Sequence record: ON529853.1
Length of the DNA stretch: 64,000 nucleotides
Strand: one strand, 5' to 3'
Every line of letters begins with the position of its first letter. Positions within the stretch are counted from its first letter, which is position 1. A program made the position numbers and the translations under genes. Of this stretch, positions 25,557 through 32,155 are shown in pieces. The notes under the pieces are model-generated. The model was not told the DNA's origin, searched no databases, and was given only the letters and a program-made list of their open reading frames with translations.

Positions 25557-25643
25557 TGGAGGTGCGACCTGGACTCGAACCAGGATGAGGGTTTCCCCTA
25601 CGGCTTATGAGGCCGCTGCCTATTCCAGCCGCGCCACCGCACC
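25557..25643 (-). tRNA. tRNA with CAT anticodon and long variable arm (Met or Ile2 unresolved)
   Basis: Acceptor GGTGCGG/TCGCACC + TCCA; anticodon arm GCGGC-CTCATAA-GCCGT; variable arm AGGG-GAAA-CCCT; T arm CCTGG-TTCGAGT-CCAGG. The D stem is weak. Confidence 0.7.
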
Positions 25644-26339: not shown

Positions 26340-26685
26340 GTAAAGTGGGGAACTTTCTGTTCCAAGGCCCGGCAAGCCGGGGTTCCCCATACCCGTGGTC
26401 GCCCTTAGGCGGCCAGGAGGACTCGTTCGCCAGCGGCGAAGTTGTCGTTGTGTGCTTCGACAGTTGTCAAAGTTGGATCGTGAGCAGCCCGAAGACCACC
26501 ATGCAGACCCTAGCACTCGCCATTCAATCCCGTCACCAACGTCAATCGATACTGTTCGGCCCCTCAAACCGCGCCCGTCTCCCATTATAGGAGGGGGATT
26601 GGTGGAGCCGACGGGATTCGCACCCGTGTCTTGTCCGTCTGTTTCGTTCTCTCTGCTTCGGTCCGAAGACCTCCGCGCGACGAAA
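26340..26685 (-). ncRNA. ssrA: Two-piece (circularly permuted) tmRNA
   Basis: The acceptor piece ends ...CCCGTCGGCTCCACCA at 26600. After an intervening segment the coding piece starts GGGGCCGA at 26563, giving G3:U70. Tag frame 26455-26405 reads AHNDNFAAGERVLLAA*. Outer boundaries are approximate. Confidence 0.9.
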
Positions 26686-26738: not shown

Positions 26739-26825
26739 TGGAGGGACGGGTGAGAATCGAACTCACGCCAGGCTTTCGCCAGGAGGATTTGCAGTCCCCC
26801 GCCTTACCACTCAGTCCACCGTCCC
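26739..26825 (-). tRNA. tRNA-Cys(GCA) with long variable arm
   Basis: GGGACGG/CCGTCCC + TCCA (U73); GGGGA-CTGCAAA-TCCTC; GGC-GAAA-GCC variable arm; GTGAG-TTCGATT-CTCAC. Confidence 0.85.
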
Positions 26826-27205: not shown

Positions 27206-27943
27206 ATGCTACACAGTGTTCATGGCGCCGTTCCCAAGCTTAAGCGCTGGTGCGGACCTTCCGCCATTTCCATCATTACCGGGCAACCCTATCACCATGC
27301 CCTGGCGTTGCTCAAAGACGTCAAGGCGTCCAGGCGCACTTACCGCATAGCGAAGGAGCCCGTCATCAAGGGCGCCTCGTCGCCCAGCGTCCGCACCGTC
27401 CTGAAGGACCTGGGCTATCTGACGACGCAGCGGGTGACGCCTGAGGGCATCACCGTCGCGGCCTGGCTGGCGGCCCGCCGTCCCGCCGATCTGTTCACGA
27501 CCTTTCTGATCGTGGCGGCCAATCACTGGATGGTGGTGCGCGGCGACGAAGCCTGCTGCGGCATTCTCGGGACGCCGACGCCGGTCGAGCGCATGAAGTT
27601 CCGGCGCGGCGTCGTCACCGAGTGCTGGGTGGTTGAGGCGTCCGCGCAGGGCGTGGCGCCGATCGTCACCGAGGTGCGGGCCAAACCGAGGGCGGCGGCG
27701 TCCGCCTGGGACCGGCGTGAGGCGAGCGACCGCCGCGCTTTCGCCAAGCTGGCGCGCCAACAGGGGTTCACCTACAAGATCGTGCGCGACTGCGACACGA
27801 TCCGCTACATGGAAATCGACGCCTGCGCCCCGTTCCCTCAAGGTCTCGCCACCCTGCACCACGACTGGGCGGAGACCCTGGACCGGGTCCGGCACTGTCT
27901 GGAGCATCCCGAGGACGCCGCCGAAGGCAGCTACGGCCGCTGA
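27206..27943 (+). CDS. Hypothetical protein
   Basis: 245 aa ORF ending at a terminator. An N-terminal WCGP and later NHW hint at a papain-like fold. Confidence 0.65.
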   Translation: MLHSVHGAVPKLKRWCGPSAISIITGQPYHHALALLKDVKASRRTYRIAKEPVIKGASSPSVRTVLKDLGYLTTQRVTPEGITVAAWLAARRPADLFTTFLIVAANHWMVVRGDEACCGILGTPTPVERMKFRRGVVTECWVVEASAQGVAPIVTEVRAKPRAAASAWDRREASDRRAFAKLARQQGFTYKIVRDCDTIRYMEIDACAPFPQGLATLHHDWAETLDRVRHCLEHPEDAAEGSYGR

Positions 27944-27948
27944 ACGCA

Positions 27949-27983
27949 AGAGCCCCGACCGATGTCTCGGCCGGGGCTTTTTC
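27949..27983. terminator. Bidirectional terminator
   Basis: AAGAGCCCCGACCGA...TCGGCCGGGGCTTTTT. Confidence 0.75.
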
Positions 27984-28247
27984 TCGCCGTCGTCTGTGTC
28001 TCGGCCGGCGCAGCGTCAGGAGGGTGTGTCGCGAGACCTCCGTCACGGCTCCAGGGCGCTGGGTCCCCTGAAGCAATCCTCACCTGAACCGGGCTTTCCT
28101 CCCCAAGGGGCTGAAGGTGGCGGCGTCCTGGCGACCCTGCGGGGCTCACACGGCAAGGTCGCTTCTCAATGCCAGGCATAGAAGTCGACAGGAGAAAGGG
28201 TTTTCCTATTCTCCGTCATTGGCGTGGTCCGATGTCGATGTAGCACA

Positions 28248-28798
28248 GCCTCTGGCTGCCGTCACGCCTGGTTCCCATTTCTAGGACGGCGTTCTCCTCA
28301 GAAGACGGGTCCGGGTAGACCTCGTGTGGCTCTTCAGCGCCTGACGGAACTCGACGACGTGGTTGCCGGCCGTCTGAACTGGCGTCCCCAAGCGCTCCCA
28401 GGGGCATGCCGTAGGAGTGTGGCAGGGTCCGCCCCACGCTGTGTCAGGATATACGACAATGAAGAGGGGGAAGTCAATACCGCCTCTGGCGGCCGTCACG
28501 CCTGGTCGTTCGTCTCGGGCGGCGTTCCCGTCAGGCCTGATTGTCCCCGGCCGAGGTTTGTTCGGGGGAGCGGTGCGGTCAATCACCCCGACTCACGTTC
28601 TCTCGTAACCCGGCAGTACGGGCTTAAGCGCGCACGAGCGCTGCAAGGCAGTCACGCGGTGGTCCGCCTGTGGTGGGGCTTCAAATCCAGACGCGCAATC
28701 CCCGCCTGTATGTCAGGATTGTCGTCAACGGTCAAGGTGAAAGGGCGCTCTCTCCCGGTCACGCCTTGTCCTGATGTCTCAGCCGGCGTTCGCTTCAG
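28248..28798. repeat. Three dispersed copies of GTCACGCC-N19/20-GGCGTTC-N3-TCAG
   Basis: Copies at 28261, 28495 and 28758. The first two also share 24 of 25 nt over 28248-28272 and 28482-28506. Confidence 0.7.
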
Positions 28799-28973
28799 AC
28801 AGTACGGCATTCTCGGGGCCGTCCCACTCACCCGCTGTCGTCGGGCCTGTTCCCAGAGGAAGGTCTACCCCAGGACAGATTGCTCCAGAGGCCAGGTCAG
28901 GGCGAACCCTGTGTGCTGCGCCATAAGGACCTTCAGCAAGCGGTTAGCCTATCAGGATCGGGGCCAGAGGGCA

Positions 28974-29008
28974 AAGAAAAACGGCCCTGATCCGAAGATC
29001 AGGGCCGC
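28974..29008 (-). terminator. Terminator after the Ro60/TROVE gene
   Basis: Minus strand GCGGCCCTGATC-TTCG-GATCAGGGCCGT-TTTTCTTT. Confidence 0.85.
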
Positions 29009-29064
29009 CTCAAACTTACGTTGTAGCGTAATTCCGCACGCGGATTACGAATACCCGTGCCGGA

Positions 29065-30450
29065 TCAGCCGACGACGTTTCCGTCCGAGAAATCCATCGC
29101 TTCGACTTCCCGGATATAGCGCAGGACGCTCTCCGAGAAGCCGTCGATGTGGACCCACCCGTTGCCGTACCCGACACCATTCTGGTGGCTGGCGACGTTG
29201 ATCATATAGGCCTTGCCGGCCTTAGGCGCCGGCAGTCGTCCTCCGCCCATGGTGCTGCTCAGGGCGCCGTTCGCCTGTTCGTCAGTGATGACGATCAGGC
29301 GGTCGCAGGCGAACTGGCGGTTCACCACGTCCACGGCCTGGGCCAGGGCGGTGCCGTTGTGCGGCTGCGAACGGATCACCGCATCGACCCCCGCCATGCC
29401 CTTGCGGGCCGGCACTTCCACGAGGCCGTTGGAGAAGGTCACGACGCGCACGTCGCCCGGCAGGATCGACGCCAGCGTCGCCGCCGCGTCCATCCGGGTC
29501 AGGTCCGACTTTCCGGACAGCTTGTTCCGCATGGAATAGGAGACGTCGACCATGACCACGGTCGATCCCGTGAAGGGTTCGGCCTGGTTGATCGAGGCCA
29601 CCAGGGCGTCGTCCAGCGCCCGCTCGAACGAGGGCGCATAGCGCGCCGCCGCCGTGAAGCGGAAGGGCAGGACGCGATCCGCGCCCTTGCGCGCCCGGAT
29701 CGCGGCGTTGACCAGATCGCGATCGACGCCGGCCTGCTCCATGTTGCGCAGGTTGCGCAGCAGGGCGAGGTAGCCCAGCTTGCCGTCGGTCAGCAGACGC
29801 GTGAACGTCGCCTTCTTGTCCGCGCCGCCCGACAGGGCGACTTCCCAGGTGTCGGGCGCCGCCAGTTCGTTGTCGACCAGCTTCTTGTAGAGGGTCTCGC
29901 GGTCATCGTTCGCCGGCTTGGCGTGCGCCAGGAACAGGACGTCGCGCAGACGCACCGACTTGGCCCGATCGTATTTGGCGATCTGGTAGGCGTCGAAGTT
30001 GCCGAAGGCCATCGACAGGCCCTTCTTCACCTGGGCCGACAACGGCGCCTTCTTGCCGTTCGAGCGCAGCGGGTTCAGCGCCCAGTAGAGGGCCAGGAAC
30101 TCGCTCAGTTCGTCAGCGCGCTGAATGACGCGCGCGATGGTGAGCGACACCAGGGCCGAACCTGAGCCGCGCTGGGCCAGCACGACGAGCAGCAGAAGGG
30201 GAACGTGACGCAGCTTGGCGTCCTCGCGGGCCTCGACGGCGATCTGGGCGAGGGTCTCGACCGGAACCTCCTTGGCGAGGCTCTGGATACGGTCGGCGAT
30301 CGACACGCCGCTCTCGTAGAAATTGTCTTCCCAGAGCAGGCAGGACATGACCGACCGGCGCAGGGCCTGCGTCTTGGTCATCCGATCGGCCGGCGCGCCT
30401 TCATGAGTTCGCGCGGTGGTCGCTTTGGGCTTTGCGTTGATCGACGCCAT
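29065..30450 (-). CDS. rsr: Ro60/Rsr TROVE-domain RNA-binding protein with C-terminal vWA domain
   Basis: THEGAPA, LRRSVMSCLLWEDNFYESG, KY, TWEVALS, LGYLALLRNLRNM, VLPFRF and MIDAS-like VDVSYSM...ITDEQ. SD AGGAGG upstream. Confidence 0.9.
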   Translation of the reverse strand: MASINAKPKATTARTHEGAPADRMTKTQALRRSVMSCLLWEDNFYESGVSIADRIQSLAKEVPVETLAQIAVEAREDAKLRHVPLLLLVVLAQRGSGSALVSLTIARVIQRADELSEFLALYWALNPLRSNGKKAPLSAQVKKGLSMAFGNFDAYQIAKYDRAKSVRLRDVLFLAHAKPANDDRETLYKKLVDNELAAPDTWEVALSGGADKKATFTRLLTDGKLGYLALLRNLRNMEQAGVDRDLVNAAIRARKGADRVLPFRFTAAARYAPSFERALDDALVASINQAEPFTGSTVVMVDVSYSMRNKLSGKSDLTRMDAAATLASILPGDVRVVTFSNGLVEVPARKGMAGVDAVIRSQPHNGTALAQAVDVVNRQFACDRLIVITDEQANGALSSTMGGGRLPAPKAGKAYMINVASHQNGVGYGNGWVHIDGFSESVLRYIREVEAMDFSDGNVVG

Positions 30451-30483
30451 GATGGGTCCCCTCCTAAGTGTCTGTCGGCAGGA

Positions 30484-30656
30484 TGACCTTGAGGTTGGGG
30501 AGGAAAAGTCGAAAACCCTTTCATACCGGTGCGTCTACCGTTTCCGCCACCCGCGCATTGTGGCGCGCGAGCCAGGACTTGAACCTGGAAGCCCTTGACG
30601 GGCGCCGGTTCCAGACGAAGTATGGGCTCTCTGCGCCATCCCCGACCTCGCGGTCA
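30484..30656 (-). ncRNA. Y-RNA-like element with permuted class II (Leu-like) tRNA domain
   Basis: Terminal stem GAGGTCGGGGA/TCCCCAACCTC; variable arm GCCC-GTCAA-GGGC; T arm CCAGG-TTCAAGT-CCTGG; CTCGCGC-GCCA-caat-GCGCGGG; D region GGTGGCGGAAACGGTAGACGC. Confidence 0.75.
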
Positions 30657-30661
30657 GTGAA

Positions 30662-30812
30662 CTCTCCGGCGCTCTGGTAGGAAGGCGGGGGAACATACGC
30701 AGCCGGATAGCGGGATCGAACCGCGAGACCGGGGGTTTGAATCCCGGCTTATCAACCAGCGATGTAACCGACCGCTTTCACCACCCGCCCACCAACCAGG
30801 GCGCCGGAAAAG
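30662..30812 (-). ncRNA. Y-RNA-like element with T-loop
   Basis: Roughly 25-bp imperfect terminal stem, GTGGTGAAAG motif, T arm GCGG-TTCGATC-CCGC. Confidence 0.65.
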
Positions 30813-30817
30813 CAGAA

Positions 30818-30970
30818 ACATGAAGGCGGTGGGGGAATAAGCGACCCCACTCTTTTTTAGGCGTGCTACCGTTACACCAAACGCCGCTAGGCGACGTTGC
30901 GGAATCGAACCGCTCATCCCGCTCCACATGCGATGAAAGTGACGTCTGTCGCCACCCACCGCCTTCATGC
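30818..30970 (-). ncRNA. YrlA-like Y RNA (permuted tRNA domain)
   Basis: 16-bp terminal stem GCATGAAGGCGGTGGG/CCCACCGCCTTCATGT; GTGGCGACAG motif; T arm; loop-closed acceptor stem AACGTCGC-CTA-GCGGCGTT; D arm GTGT-AACGGTA-GCAC. Confidence 0.75.
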
Positions 30971-30979
30971 TGTTGGTCC

Positions 30980-31155
30980 AGAAGCGTATGGTGGATCGAC
31001 AGGGGAACCGGCGGAAAGGCGCCGTTTGGACTATCGTTCTAACCAACTGAACTACCGCCGCGCCCGAGGGTGCGCCGGGTGGGACTCGAACCCACGACCT
31101 ACAGTGTGCGAAGAATGCCTCTCCTTCACCACCTGTCGACCCGCCATACGCTTCT
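30980..31155 (-). ncRNA. YrlA-like Y RNA (permuted tRNA domain)
   Basis: 24-bp terminal stem; GTGGTGAAGG motif; T arm GTGGG-TTCGAGT-CCCAC; loop-closed acceptor stem; D arm GTTC-AGTTGGTTA-GAAC. Confidence 0.8.
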
Positions 31156-31161
31156 CGACCC

Positions 31162-31307
31162 TGTCCGCGACAGTCCCGAGGACTGACCCCGCAGAGAACC
31201 GGAGTTCTCTTGCGGGGTCAAGTCGTCCGGGAATAGGCGGAACCGAGAGCGGGGCCAAGGCCCCAACGTACCAAAAACGAAGAACTCGGTCCCTGTCGCC
31301 ACGGACA
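31162..31307 (-). ncRNA. Y-RNA-like element without tRNA domain
   Basis: TGTCCG-tgg-CGACAG pairs with CTGTCG-CGGACA. It carries the GTGGCGACAG motif and three internal hairpins, just behind a TTGACA promoter. Confidence 0.55.
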
Positions 31308-31372
31308 ATGACTGTGTGCCCGATCCCGTTCATTGTGTCAACAACGACGACAGAAAAAGTTGGGATTTGCGG

Positions 31373-31407
31373 CAAAAAGAAACCCCCGGATCGCTCCGGG
31401 GGTTTCC
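31373..31407 (-). terminator. Terminator after the repressor-like gene
   Basis: Minus strand GGAAACCCCCGGAG-CGA-TCCGGGGGTTTCTTTTT. Confidence 0.8.
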
Positions 31408-31438
31408 ACGACGTCTGACGTCGGCGGGGGTTCCAGGG

Positions 31439-32155
31439 TCAGACGCCGATCTTGCCCACCACCTTGCCCAGCAGGGTGATGCTCTTGGCGGGGACGTCGC
31501 GGTGTCCGCGACGGTCCTGATCGAAGATGCGGTAGGGGCCGTTGGCGCTGGGGCGGGTGAGGTGGTCGACGCGGACCTCGCCGTCCAGGGCGTAGACGAA
31601 GGTGGCGCCCGTGGGGGTGGGGGTCGCCTCGCGCTGCACGAAGGCCATCTCGCCCGGTTGCAGGTTCTCGGCGAAATCGTCGATCCGGATCAGGGCGAGG
31701 GATTCGGTCGGCACGTCGAACTGGGTTTGCAGCCAGTCGGCGAACATGGGCCAGGCGCGGGCGGCGGTGAAGCCCTTGCGCGGGCCGGCGAACTCGACTT
31801 CTTGCAGGGTGACGAGGTCTTCGATCCCGTCGGCCAGCCATTGCGGCGCGGTTTGCAGCGCCTCGGCGAGGATGTCAGCCTTCTGGGTGCCGAACGCCAG
31901 CCACTCCGGCGAACATTGCAGGGCCTCGGCCAGGGTGACGATCTTCTCGATGTCCGGCAGAACGTCCCCGGTCTCGTACATGCAGTAGGCGGAGCGGGAC
32001 AGGACCTTCCACTCGGCCTGGCGGCGGTTGTAGAATCTGATCTTGGCCGCAACCTCGGCCTGGGACATGTCCAGTTCCATGCGGCGCGACGTCATGCGCT
32101 CCTGCATGGTGGTGGGGTTATCGATCATTCCCTTGAGCGACCCCTTGCGATGCAT
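31439..32155 (-). CDS. XRE-HTH / S24-domain CI-like repressor
   Basis: RRMELDMSQAEVA...YCMYETG..LPDIEKIVTLAEALQCSPEWLAFG HTH, with a degenerate S24-type C-terminus. Start uncertain. Confidence 0.75.
   Translation of the reverse strand: MHRKGSLKGMIDNPTTMQERMTSRRMELDMSQAEVAAKIRFYNRRQAEWKVLSRSAYCMYETGDVLPDIEKIVTLAEALQCSPEWLAFGTQKADILAEALQTAPQWLADGIEDLVTLQEVEFAGPRKGFTAARAWPMFADWLQTQFDVPTESLALIRIDDFAENLQPGEMAFVQREATPTPTGATFVYALDGEVRVDHLTRPSANGPYRIFDQDRRGHRDVPAKSITLLGKVVGKIGV

What the first reader, a model, noticed from the sequence alone, without database searches (positions are those of the whole stretch)
28200..28965. Three tandem units of about 230-260 nt sharing a stem-loop motif downstream of rsr
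Seen: about 760 nt without a credible ORF holds three copies of a motif. On the minus strand it reads CTGA-N3-GAACGCC-N19/20-GGCGTGAC, with ACGCC/GGCGT pairing, at 28261, 28495 and 28758. Each unit also has ATCCTGA near its 5' side. Two units have TTGAC promoter-like sequences upstream (about 28477 and 28735), and two end in a C(A/C)GCC-AGA-GGC(T/G)G hairpin. Sequence between the motifs is divergent. Inference: a paralogous sRNA or ribozyme family with a conserved core, possibly further Rsr clients.
Basis: partly seen in the sequence, partly recalled or inferred. Interest (0 to 1): 0.7.

Follow-up and report, generated by a model that had tools for sequence, protein, structure and literature searches.

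The report
Tandem phage RNAs sharing 3' pseudoknot
Downstream of the Ro60-like gene of a Brevundimonas jumbo phage lie four (not three) small non-coding RNA genes that all end in the same ~60-nt pseudoknot-plus-hairpin module; the family is not in Rfam and occurs in every phiCbK-like phage examined, including those with no Ro60 gene, so it is probably not a Ro partner.

Summary
The window is Brevundimonas phage vB_BpoS-Bambus. The reading needs revising.

(1) The 1.1-kb gene-free gap holds four conserved blocks of about 200-235 nt. Variable spacers with -35/-10-like boxes separate them. The fourth block carries a degenerate motif and ends in an intrinsic terminator.

(2) The "stem-loop" is an H-type pseudoknot. 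UGA-[xGy]-GA-(ACGCC)-G-[y'Cx']-RAGA...-(GGCGU)-GACG is followed by a covarying CC-AGA-GG hairpin. The y:y' pair shows five pair types and no mispair.

(3) The module is present in 3-4 copies in each fully examined phiCbK-like (Dolichocephalovirinae) phage. Four complete genomes that have it lack rsr, and in CcrColossus it lies 24 kb from rsr, next to tRNA-Cys.

(4) Y RNAs of the YrlA type do exist here, as an unannotated array of four upstream of rsr.

So this is a paralogous, structured phage ncRNA family with no Rfam match. "Rsr clients" is not supported, and the ribozyme idea is untested. The most likely role is a shared 3' protein-binding or stabilising handle on RNAs with class-specific 5' domains. 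There is no direct transcript evidence for Bambus.

The parts
29065..30450 (-). rsr (Ro60-like protein; TROVE + vWA). Context gene, not part of the RNA family.
   Evidence: Pfam TROVE E 2.6e-12 and VWA_2 E 2.4e-06. Annotated 'RNA-binding protein' BAMBUS_03890.
28975..29007 (-). rsr terminator: an 11-bp perfect hairpin (arms 28997-29007 and 28982-28992) followed by a U-run.
   Evidence: Inverted repeat I8 and the sequence. The stem shows compensatory changes in Kabachok.
28946..28975 (-). Promoter-like boxes of RNA1: -35 TTTGCC (28975-28970), 18-nt spacer, -10 TAGGCT (28951-28946).
   Evidence: Both boxes are identical in Bambus, Marchewka and Kabachok, while the spacer between them is scrambled. 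Not called by the E. coli-type scan. Inferred.
28742..28941 (-). RNA1 (about 200 nt), beta class. Its 5' GGCGCAGCAC is shared with the phiCbK, Magneto, Rogue, BL57 and BL10 beta units. Module at 28800-28742, with terminal hairpin variant GGG-AGAGAGCG-CCC.
   Evidence: Conserved block; model R1 hit of 69.7 bits; shared 5' box; pseudoknot descriptor hit at 28797.
28707..28735 (-). Promoter-like boxes of RNA2: -35 TTGACC (28735-28730), 17-nt spacer, -10 CATACA (28712-28707).
   Evidence: The boxes are conserved and the spacer varies in Kabachok. Inferred.
28479..28702 (-). RNA2 (about 225 nt). Its internal domain (UCGUG...CGUGAG, CGGGG...CCCC hairpin, ACAAACC) is shared with Gurke unit C, Colossus unit 3 and CcrPW. 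Module at 28536-28479.
   Evidence: (71.1 bits). RNAalifold gave 53 pairs, 22 of them with compensatory changes. Descriptor hit at 28533.
28448..28477 (-). Promoter-like boxes of RNA3: -35 TTGACT (28477-28472), 18-nt spacer, -10 TATATC (28453-28448).
   Evidence: Sequence; conserved in Kabachok, with a 1-nt spacer change. Inferred.
28245..28441 (-). RNA3 (about 200 nt). Module at 28303-28245, with S1 GGA:UCC (GGG:UCC in Kabachok).
   Evidence: 80.5 bits; descriptor hit at 28300.
27950..28185 (-). Degenerate module at 28020-27981 (UGA-CGC-UG-CGCC-G-GCC-GAGACACAGACGAC-GGCG-AGAAAAA). An A-rich linker and an intrinsic terminator (27951-27978) stand in place of GACG + hairpin 2.
   Evidence: Conserved block; weak R1 hit at 27985-28010; descriptor hit at 28018; terminator. 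The same 'last-unit' layout is seen in Gurke C and in the gamma units of phiCbK, Rogue, BL57 and BL10.
30491..31137 (-). Array of four YrlA-type (tRNA-like) Y RNAs upstream of rsr. Listed for contrast: these are the likely Rsr partners. Not part of the family.
   Evidence: Sequence shows T arm, closed acceptor-like stem, D arm, 5' GGUGGYGAAG and 3' UUCCCC. Rfam YrlA RF02553 matches 31011-31123 at 32.6 bits, E 5.4e-05. Equivalent arrays occur in Gurke, Colossus and Xanthomonas phage Bolivar.

Best explanation
The gap downstream of rsr encodes four paralogous structured non-coding RNAs of about 200-235 nt. They are probably transcribed independently. They belong to a family found only in phiCbK-like jumbo phages (Dolichocephalovirinae) in the collections searched.

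Each RNA has a class-specific 5' domain. Some classes are orthologous across phage genera: RNA1 matches the phiCbK beta unit, and RNA2 matches Gurke C and Colossus 3.

Each RNA also carries a common 3' module. The module is a compact H-type pseudoknot with these parts:
- S1 = xGy paired with y'Cx'.
- L1 = GA.
- S2 = ACGCC paired with GGCGU.
- L3 begins RAGA and ends RACNA.
- The flanks are invariant: UGA on the 5' side and GACG on the 3' side.
- A terminal hairpin follows, which is CC-AGA-GG in most units and an intrinsic terminator in the last unit of each array.

Shown: the family, its anatomy, its phyletic spread, and covariation for S1, S2 and the hairpin.

Inferred: the module is a shared 3' handle. 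It is most likely the docking site of one common protein, either phage-encoded or from the Caulobacteraceae host, and/or a 3'-end-protecting fold. The divergent 5' domains would carry the individual functions, the same modular logic as in Y RNAs or snRNAs. The RNAs belong to the phage's stable-RNA island (tRNA-Cys, tmRNA, tRNA-Met), not to the rsr/Y-RNA cassette.
For: - Exact motif three times, none expected by chance.
- Four conserved blocks separated by variable promoter-bearing spacers in the Bambus/Marchewka/Kabachok alignment. Frame-breaking indels exclude coding.
- Covariance model R1 scores 37-83 bits at 22 sites in 12 sources, all of them Dolichocephalovirinae.
- Nothing real in IMG/VR beyond these isolates, and nothing real in one genome of each of 185,579 prokaryote species.
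- Hairpin 2 and S2: 94% of cells are paired, and 0 of 500 shuffles reach the observed covariation score.
- Pseudoknot pair y:y' is CG 14, GC 3, AU 1, GU 1, UG 1 with no mispair. It is the best covarying pair among all column pairs.
- A strict pseudoknot descriptor finds 4 copies in this 1.1-kb gap and 2-4 per related phage. It finds only 1 other hit in the whole 64-kb window on both strands. S2 differs among copies: ACGCC/GGCGU, AAGCC/GGCUU, ACGUC/GACGU, GGCC/GGCC, CGCCC/GGGCG, UGCGU/ACGCA and GGACU/GGUCC.
- The 5' domain of the RNA2 class has 22 compensatory pairs.
- The module stays next to tRNA-Cys in Colossus, phiCbK, Magneto, Rogue and BL57.
- Four transcriptomic runs hold 97-100% of the sampled words of the identical phiCbK/Karma beta+gamma stretch.
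- No Rfam family matches the gap even at E <= 10.
Against: - There is no direct transcript, 5'-end or 3'-end evidence for Bambus. The read laying was too sparse to use. The phiCbK RNA-seq holdings could reflect pervasive transcription or carried-over DNA.
- The minimum free energies of all four RNAs are no better than those of shuffles, with z from +1.6 to -1.1.
- S2 is almost invariant in the canonical copies: 4 of 5 pairs never vary. Its covariation rests on diverged paralogues that were found with a descriptor requiring pairing.
- The third S1 pair (x:x') is a C.C mismatch in half of the copies.
- No partner protein has been identified, so the 'handle' function is inference only.
- The promoter boxes were not called by the consensus scan.
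Confidence: 0.55

Rival explanations
1. The RNAs are additional, non-canonical Y RNAs. On this reading the module (consensus SGCGAACG within UGAnGnGAACG) is an Rsr/Ro60 binding site, and the 5' domains are effector-binding modules.
For: - In Bambus, Marchewka, Kabachok, Gurke and Kikimora the units lie within 1.1 kb of rsr on the same strand.
- xGyGAAMG resembles the published Rsr-associated motif GNCGAAN0-1G (PMC4201824). It matches that motif exactly (GGCGAACG) in Gurke B, Rogue and BL10.
- It also resembles GGUGAAGG/GGCGUAG of the YrlA-type RNAs in the same phages.
- Phages with rsr carry 2-4 strong copies. Phages without rsr carry 1 strong and 2 degenerate copies.
Against: - The complete genomes of phiCbK, Magneto, Rogue and BL57 have the module but no Rsr.
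- In Colossus and CcrPW the module is about 24 kb from rsr, while six YrlA-type RNAs sit directly upstream of rsr.
- Only 12 of 201 Caulobacterales genomes have a TROVE protein, and there is no module near four of those genes.
- There is no module near rsr in 39 other viral contigs or in the Xanthomonas phages.
- The motif lies at the 3' end inside a pseudoknot, not in a 5'/3' terminal stem.
- The 3' strand is GUGAC, not the UUCCCC of the local Y RNAs.
- The Rfam YrlA model finds nothing in the gap.
Confidence: 0.15
2. The module is a small self-cleaving ribozyme, or the recognition fold of a processing nuclease. It would cut read-through transcripts of the tandem array and release the neighbouring tRNA.
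For: - It is a compact pseudoknot with many invariant unpaired purines (UGA, GA, RAGA, GACG).
- There is one copy at the end of every unit.
- RNA1-3 have no U-tract terminator after hairpin 2.
- In Colossus the third module ends 8 nt before tRNA-Cys.
- GA-(stem)-GA next to CUGA recalls the hammerhead core.
Against: - No ribozyme family in Rfam matches.
- The hammerhead core is not met. CUGA-NGN-GA stands in place of CUGA-N-GA, C stands in place of A14, and C3 is A or G in several copies.
- Each unit has its own promoter-like boxes, so processing is not required.
- No cleavage-site conservation has been identified.
Confidence: 0.1
3. The module acts in cis on transcription. It would be a factor-dependent terminator or pause signal, or a put-like antiterminator, governing RNA polymerase as it passes through the dense RNA-gene island.
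For: - It always lies at unit ends, immediately before a stable hairpin.
- In the last unit of every array, hairpin 2 is replaced by a canonical intrinsic terminator.
- All units and the downstream stable-RNA genes are co-oriented in Colossus and Bambus.
Against: - Hairpin 2 is only 5-6 bp and has no U-run.
- In phiCbK the neighbouring tRNA-Cys is convergent, so there is nothing downstream to read into.
- Strict conservation of single-stranded purines is more typical of a folded binding site.
Confidence: 0.08
4. The motif works as DNA, as a protein-binding inverted repeat (ACGCC-N19-GGCGT), and no functional RNA is involved.
For: The S2 arms are nearly invariant in sequence across genera. The spacing of about two helical turns would suit a dimeric DNA binder.
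Against: - It is strand-asymmetric and always co-oriented with the flanking RNA genes.
- G.U and U.G pairs are tolerated in S1 and hairpin 2.
- The S1 pairing crosses S2, which has no meaning in duplex DNA.
- The S2 sequence is replaced entirely, while pairing is kept, in the alpha and gamma copies.
- The flanking 150-190 nt are conserved blocks with covarying helices.
Confidence: 0.03

Closest known systems
Bacterial/phage Y RNAs of the YrlA type (Rfam RF02553; Chen et al. 2014, PMC4201824)
   Same: Several paralogous small RNAs in tandem beside rsr on the same strand (in Bambus-like phages). They share the modular logic of one conserved module plus divergent domains. A short purine-rich string (SGCGAACG) resembles GNCGAAN0-1G.
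   Different: There is no tRNA-like T/AS/D domain and no terminal 5'/3' stem, and the motif sits in a 3' pseudoknot. The family is present in phages without rsr and lies far from rsr in Colossus. The Rfam YrlA model hits the upstream array but not these RNAs.
Stable RNAs of unknown function in phage tRNA clusters (for example T4 species 1 and 2 / RNAs C and D; from my own knowledge, not tested here)
   Same: Small, apparently non-coding RNAs encoded within a phage's tRNA/stable-RNA island. Function is unknown.
   Different: No sequence or structural relation was tested or is expected. Here the RNAs have their own promoter-like boxes and a shared pseudoknot module.
Shared pseudoknotted 3' modules of multipartite RNA viruses (tRNA-like structures of plant viruses; from my own knowledge)
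   Same: The same conserved pseudoknot-containing 3' module is appended to otherwise different RNAs. This implies one common recognition event.
   Different: There is no acceptor/T-arm mimicry and no CCA end. These are DNA-phage transcripts, not genomes. This is a resemblance of logic only.
Hammerhead ribozyme core
   Same: CUGA followed by GA-(stem)-GA, that is, possible tandem sheared G.A pairs extending the stem.
   Different: Two extra nucleotides lie between CUGA and GA. C stands in place of the essential A14. CUGA is AUGA or GUGA in several members. No stems I/III were found and there is no Rfam hit.

Membership tests
YrlA / bacterial Y RNA | Encoded within about 4 kb of rsr on the same strand | tested here: inconclusive
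   Met in Bambus, Marchewka, Kabachok, Gurke and Kikimora. Not met in Colossus and CcrPW, where the module is about 24 kb away. rsr is absent altogether from phiCbK, Magneto, Rogue and BL57.
YrlA / bacterial Y RNA | tRNA-like effector domain (T arm, closed acceptor-like stem, D arm) | tested here: not met
   No YrlA, tRNA or tRNA-clan hit in 27900-29100 at E <= 10. The same search on 30440-31450 finds YrlA at E 5.4e-05.
YrlA / bacterial Y RNA | GNCGAAN0-1G near the 5' end, in a stem formed by the paired 5' and 3' ends | tested here: not met
   A similar string exists, but it lies 140-180 nt from the 5' end, inside the 3' pseudoknot. RNAalifold found no covarying terminal stem.
YrlA / bacterial Y RNA | Bound by Rsr/Ro60 | not testable with these tools
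   The complex prediction was not folded for a protein-RNA pair.
H-type RNA pseudoknot (structural class) | Two stems in the order S1(5')-S2(5')-S1(3')-S2(3'), each supported by covariation, with loop lengths that can span the stems | tested here: met
   The S1 y:y' pair shows five pair types with no mispair, and G:C is invariant. S2 is 100% paired. L1 is 2 nt, L2 is 0-1 nt and L3 is 12-16 nt.
Hammerhead ribozyme | Core CUGANGA ... GAAA with stems I-III | tested here: not met
   The sequence is CUGA-NGN-GA and GAC, and the first C is variable. No Rfam hammerhead hit.
Kink-turn | Canonical C stem, 3-nt bulge, tandem G.A/A.G, then NC stem | tested here: not met
   A GA/GA flank on S2 is possible. 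However, the nucleotides that would form the C stem (UGA against CNG) do not pair, and xGy is used in S1.
Intrinsic (rho-independent) terminator | GC-rich hairpin followed by a U-run | tested here: not met
   Not met for hairpin 2 of RNA1-3, which has a 5-6-bp stem and no U-run. Met only for the end of RNA4 at 27951-27978.
Any Rfam 15 family | Covariance-model match | tested here: not met
   No match reaches a gathering score in the gap. At E <= 10 there are only chance-level hits, to the terminators.

The most novel reading that the evidence does not exclude
The 3' module is a new functional RNA class. It would be either a previously unknown small self-cleaving/processing ribozyme, or the handle of a new phage ribonucleoprotein that equips a set of 3-4 specialised RNAs in all phiCbK-like jumbo phages. 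In the second case it would parallel, but be independent of, the Ro60/Y-RNA system that some of these phages also carry.
Probability: 0.2. Interest if true: 0.8.

Novelty: new variant of a known kind. Interest (0 to 1): 0.6.

Why it matters
phiCbK is a classic model phage of Caulobacter. Its relatives devote a whole island to stable RNAs: tRNAs, a two-piece tmRNA and, in some, Ro60 with arrays of tRNA-like Y RNAs.

A second multi-copy RNA family in the same island, conserved across genera and built around a pseudoknot with many invariant single-stranded bases, implies a common partner or activity that nobody has looked for.

The family gives concrete, mutable targets (the y:y' pair, GAACG, RAGA) in a genetically tractable phage-host pair for which infection RNA-seq already exists. 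It also corrects annotation. Several 'hypothetical proteins' in phiCbK-type genomes overlie these RNA genes, and the Y-RNA array and tmRNA of Bambus are unannotated.

For Ro60 biology it is a useful negative. Proximity to rsr alone does not make an RNA a Y RNA.

Tried and rejected
- Rfam at gathering and at E <= 10 gave nothing for the gap.
- I considered YrlA/tRNA-likeness, a K-turn and a hammerhead. All were rejected on defining features (see the membership table).
- A 7-bp pairing between the 5' flank and the loop in phiCbK (CGCCCAU:AUGGGCG) looked like a larger pseudoknot. It shrinks to 5 bp in Magneto and Rogue and is absent in the other copies inspected, so I dropped it (sequences).
- RNAalifold proposed pairing of 5' GCGC with the 3' GGCGU in the beta class. 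Both sides are invariant and the pairing competes with S2, so it is unsupported.
- Thermodynamic stability against shuffles gave no signal. My own shuffle script timed out.
- The loose regular-expression scan and the signature-only S2 test were too permissive to be informative.
- Laying reads of four RNA-labelled metagenome runs gave only scattered low-depth contigs, probably DNA.
- The phiCbK expression table of PMC10688885 is truncated in the held copy.
- The Rsr-RNA complex prediction was not folded.
- A search for the module in bacterial genomes gave 27 pattern matches, all weak by the model (30 bits or less, against 37-83 for true members), so they are chance.
- The neighbouring + strand ORF 27206-27943 has no Pfam or PHROG match.
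- I considered small-peptide coding. Only RNA3 has an AUG in the loop, and it is not conserved in the other copies.
Full report
**Identity of the window.** The stretch 27900-30500 is 100% identical to Brevundimonas phage vB_BpoS-Bambus (ON529853.1; 348 kb; Dolichocephalovirinae). It is 98% identical to Marchewka and 91% to Kabachok, Domovoi and Papperlapapp. In Gurke, Kikimora, CcrColossus and CcrPW only the rsr gene is still alignable.

The minus-strand ORF 29065-30450 is a Ro60/Rsr homologue with TROVE and vWA domains. The GenBank record annotates nothing between 27944 and 29064. No whole genome is held for the window, but whole phage records could be searched through handles.

**The observation.** The direct-repeat finder recovers the same three copies, plus the shared CMGCC-AGA-GGCKG tail of units 2 and 3.

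Aligning the gap of Bambus, Marchewka and Kabachok shows four, not three, nearly invariant blocks:
- about 28941-28742
- about 28702-28479
- about 28441-28245
- about 28185-27950

Short scrambled spacers separate the blocks. Within three spacers the only conserved islands are a -35-like box (TTTGCC, TTGACC, TTGACT) and a -10-like box (TAGGCT, CATACA, TATATC), set 17-18 nt apart. That is the pattern expected of promoters whose spacer is free to drift. The E. coli-type scan did not call them, so they remain inferred.

Its excess across the window is mostly in coding sequence. Single-base and two-base indels between the sister phages break the long antisense ORF 28224-29201, so the blocks are not coding.

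The fourth block ends in the bidirectional terminator 27951-27978. It carries a degenerate copy of the motif at 28020-27981.

**The motif is a pseudoknot.** I built a 59-nt covariance model (R1) from eight copies. It scores 37-83 bits at 22 sites.

In that alignment the terminal hairpin covaries freely (GC/CG/AU/GU), while ACGCC:GGCGU is almost invariant. Overall 94% of cells are paired, and no shuffle reaches the observed covariation score.

Inspection showed that the three bases between UGA and GA (x-G-y) are complementary to loop bases 2-4. Counted formally:
- y:y' is CG 14, GC 3, AU 1, GU 1, UG 1, with no mispair in 20 distinct sequences.
- G:C is invariant.
- x:x' pairs in half of the copies and is C.C in the rest.

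Among all column pairs of the alignment, y:y' is the single best covarying pair.

The strand order S1(5')-GA-S2(5')-N-S1(3')-L3-S2(3') is that of a classical H-type pseudoknot with workable loop lengths.

I then ran a descriptor scan. It requires UGA/UAA, S1 (two pairs mandatory), a 1-2-nt L1, a 4-5-bp S2, a 0-1-nt L2 and an L3 that starts [G/A/U]A[G/A]A. Results:

| Source | Copies |
|---|---|
| Bambus (this gap) | 4 |
| Kabachok | 4 |
| Gurke | 3 |
| Colossus | 3 |
| CcrPW | 3, plus a fourth strong R1 hit on locus L076 |
| phiCbK | 3 |
| BL57 | 3 |
| Rogue | 3 |
| BL10 | 3 |
| Magneto | 2 |
| Rest of the 64-kb window, both strands | 1 |

Among these copies S2 is replaced wholesale while pairing is kept: AAGCC/GGCUU, ACGUC/GACGU, GGCC/GGCC, CGCCC/GGGCG, AGGCC/GGCCU, UGCGU/ACGCA and GGACU/GGUCC. 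S1 likewise varies: AGC/GCU, GGA/UCC, GGG/CCC, GGU/ACC and GGC/GCC.

Because the descriptor demands pairing, this is corroboration and not an independent test. The independent evidence is the model-based alignment.

In the last unit of every array, the segment 'GACG + hairpin 2' is replaced by an A-rich linker and a true intrinsic terminator. So the constant core is the pseudoknot followed by some stable terminal hairpin.

**The 5' domains.** Pairwise comparison shows that the four Bambus units and the three Gurke units share only the module, with one exception: RNA2 shares an internal domain with Gurke C.
- RNA2, Gurke C, Colossus 3 and CcrPW share that domain. Its predicted helices show compensatory changes in 22 of 53 pairs.
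- RNA1 shares an invariant 5' GGCGCAGCAC with the 'beta' unit of phiCbK, Magneto, Rogue, BL57 and BL10.

So there are distinct RNA classes, each conserved across phage genera, all carrying the same module. Minimum-free-energy z-scores are not significant for any unit. The case for structure therefore rests on covariation, not on thermodynamics.

**Distribution and what it says about Rsr.** Searching whole phage records with R1 gave three strong copies in Bambus, two in Gurke and three in CcrColossus. In Colossus they lie at 131.7-132.2 kb, about 24 kb from its rsr (107.1-108.5 kb), and end 8 nt before tRNA-Cys.

BLAST and R1 then found the module in phiCbK, Karma, Magneto, Swift, Rogue, BL10, BL57, the Ccr2/5/10/29/32/34 isolates and others. 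In those fetched it lies next to tRNA-Cys and the tmRNA/tRNA-Met cluster.

A tblastn of Bambus Rsr against 50,697 phage records finds it in only two Caulobacter phages, Colossus and CcrPW. A direct search of the complete genomes of phiCbK, Magneto, Rogue and BL57 finds none, while the Colossus control scores E 5e-195.

The module was also absent from:
- 39 other rsr-bearing viral contigs.
- The Xanthomonas phages whose Rsr is 59% identical.
- The flanks of rsr in four Caulobacterales genomes.

Only 12 of 201 Caulobacterales genomes have a TROVE protein at all.

By contrast, the 900 nt upstream of rsr in Bambus (30491-31137) contain four RNAs with the YrlA layout: 5' GGUGGYGAAG, a T arm, a closed acceptor-like stem, a D arm and 3' UUCCCC. 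Rfam's YrlA model matches one of them at E 5e-05 but matches nothing in the downstream gap. Equivalent arrays sit directly upstream of rsr in Gurke, Colossus and Xanthomonas phage Bolivar.

The Y-RNA cassette therefore travels with rsr, while the module family travels with the tRNA-Cys/tmRNA island. The adjacency seen in Bambus-like phages is not a functional signature.

The residual argument for Rsr is the resemblance of SGCGAACG to the published GNCGAAN0-1G. I give that reading 0.15.

**Restriction of the family.** An exact-pattern scan of IMG/VR returned 85 stretches. Only those from Colossus, CcrPW, BL10, Rogue and Karma score as true members. A stricter pattern in one genome of each of 185,579 prokaryote species returned 27 stretches, about the number expected by chance, and none scores above 30 bits. 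In the collections searched, the family is specific to Dolichocephalovirinae.

**Expression.** The four RNA-labelled metagenome runs that hold parts of the Bambus stretch gave only scattered low-depth contigs, which is uninformative.

For the phiCbK/Karma beta+gamma stretch, identical in the two phages, four transcriptomic runs of 2023 hold 97-100% of the sampled words. That is consistent with transcription during infection but does not prove it, because strand and depth could not be examined. A phiCbK infection time-course RNA-seq exists (PMC10688885), but its phage table is not in the held copy.

**Interpretation.**
- Shown: a conserved, multi-copy, co-oriented set of non-coding blocks with promoter-like boxes, a covariation-supported pseudoknot-plus-hairpin module at each 3' end, covarying helices in at least one 5' domain, and a phyletic pattern tied to the stable-RNA island.
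- Inferred: the module's many invariant unpaired bases (UGA, GA, RAGA, RACNA, GACG) and its presence on otherwise unrelated RNAs point to one common recognition event. The most economical reading is a shared protein-binding and/or 3'-end-protecting handle.
- Not excluded: a ribozyme or processing role, or a cis role in transcription.
- Unlikely: a DNA-level role, given the strand asymmetry, the G.U pairs, the crossing stems and the wholesale S2 replacement.

**Novelty.** I found no Rfam family and no paper describing these RNAs. The kind of thing, paralogous structured phage ncRNAs with a shared module, is known. This module and family appear to be new.

Noticed in passing
window 30491-31137 (minus): Four tandem YrlA-type (tRNA-like) Y RNAs lie directly upstream of rsr and are unannotated in the Bambus record. 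In Gurke and Kikimora one of them is annotated as 'tRNA-Ser'. Similar arrays occur in CcrColossus (about six) and Xanthomonas phage Bolivar (about five).
   Followed up: partly
window 26405-26662 (minus): Rfam finds a permuted (two-piece) tmRNA between tRNA-Met and tRNA-Cys (57.9 bits). The GenBank record has no feature there, and ARAGORN did not call it in this window.
   Followed up: no
window 26739-26825 and 25557-25643 (minus): tRNA-Cys(GCA) and one tRNA-Met are 87 nt long, which implies a long variable arm (class II-like). This is unusual for these identities. The same long tRNA-Cys neighbours the module RNAs in all related phages examined.
   Followed up: no
window 29025-29055 (minus), between the rsr stop and its terminator: A conserved hairpin, CGUAAUCCG-loop-CGGAAUUACG, lies in the rsr 3' UTR. 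The loop changes from CGUG to UUCG in Kabachok while the stem is kept.
   Followed up: no
L057 2653-2716 (CcrColossus 132152-132215): The third module RNA ends 8 nt before the 5' end of tRNA-Cys on the same strand. RNase P cleavage of a co-transcript could therefore define its 3' end.
   Followed up: no
L143 2592-3164 (phiCbK gp290); L144 1113-1625 (Magneto gp126); L146 1318-1731 (Rogue gp307): Annotated 'hypothetical protein' genes lie on the strand opposite the module RNAs and cover them. The alignment of these phages has many 1-2-nt indels there, so these CDSs are probably spurious.
   Followed up: partly
window 27206-27943 (+): A 245-aa hypothetical protein is wedged between the module RNAs and tRNA-Cys, convergent with RNA4 and sharing its terminator. 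It has no Pfam or PHROG match. The gene is present in Bambus-like and Gurke-like phages. No gene stands at this position in Colossus or phiCbK.
   Followed up: partly
window, whole: ATCCTGA occurs 17 times against 5.5 expected, 13 of them on the minus strand. Most copies lie in coding sequence (ATC-CTG-A), so the excess looks like codon usage and not a signal.
   Followed up: yes
L003 4080-4400: Downstream of rsr in an IMG/VR contig there is a run of CCGAA-containing repeats (GCCGAAGG, GCCGAACG, ...). It could be either a repetitive coding region or Rsr-motif-like repeats.
   Followed up: no
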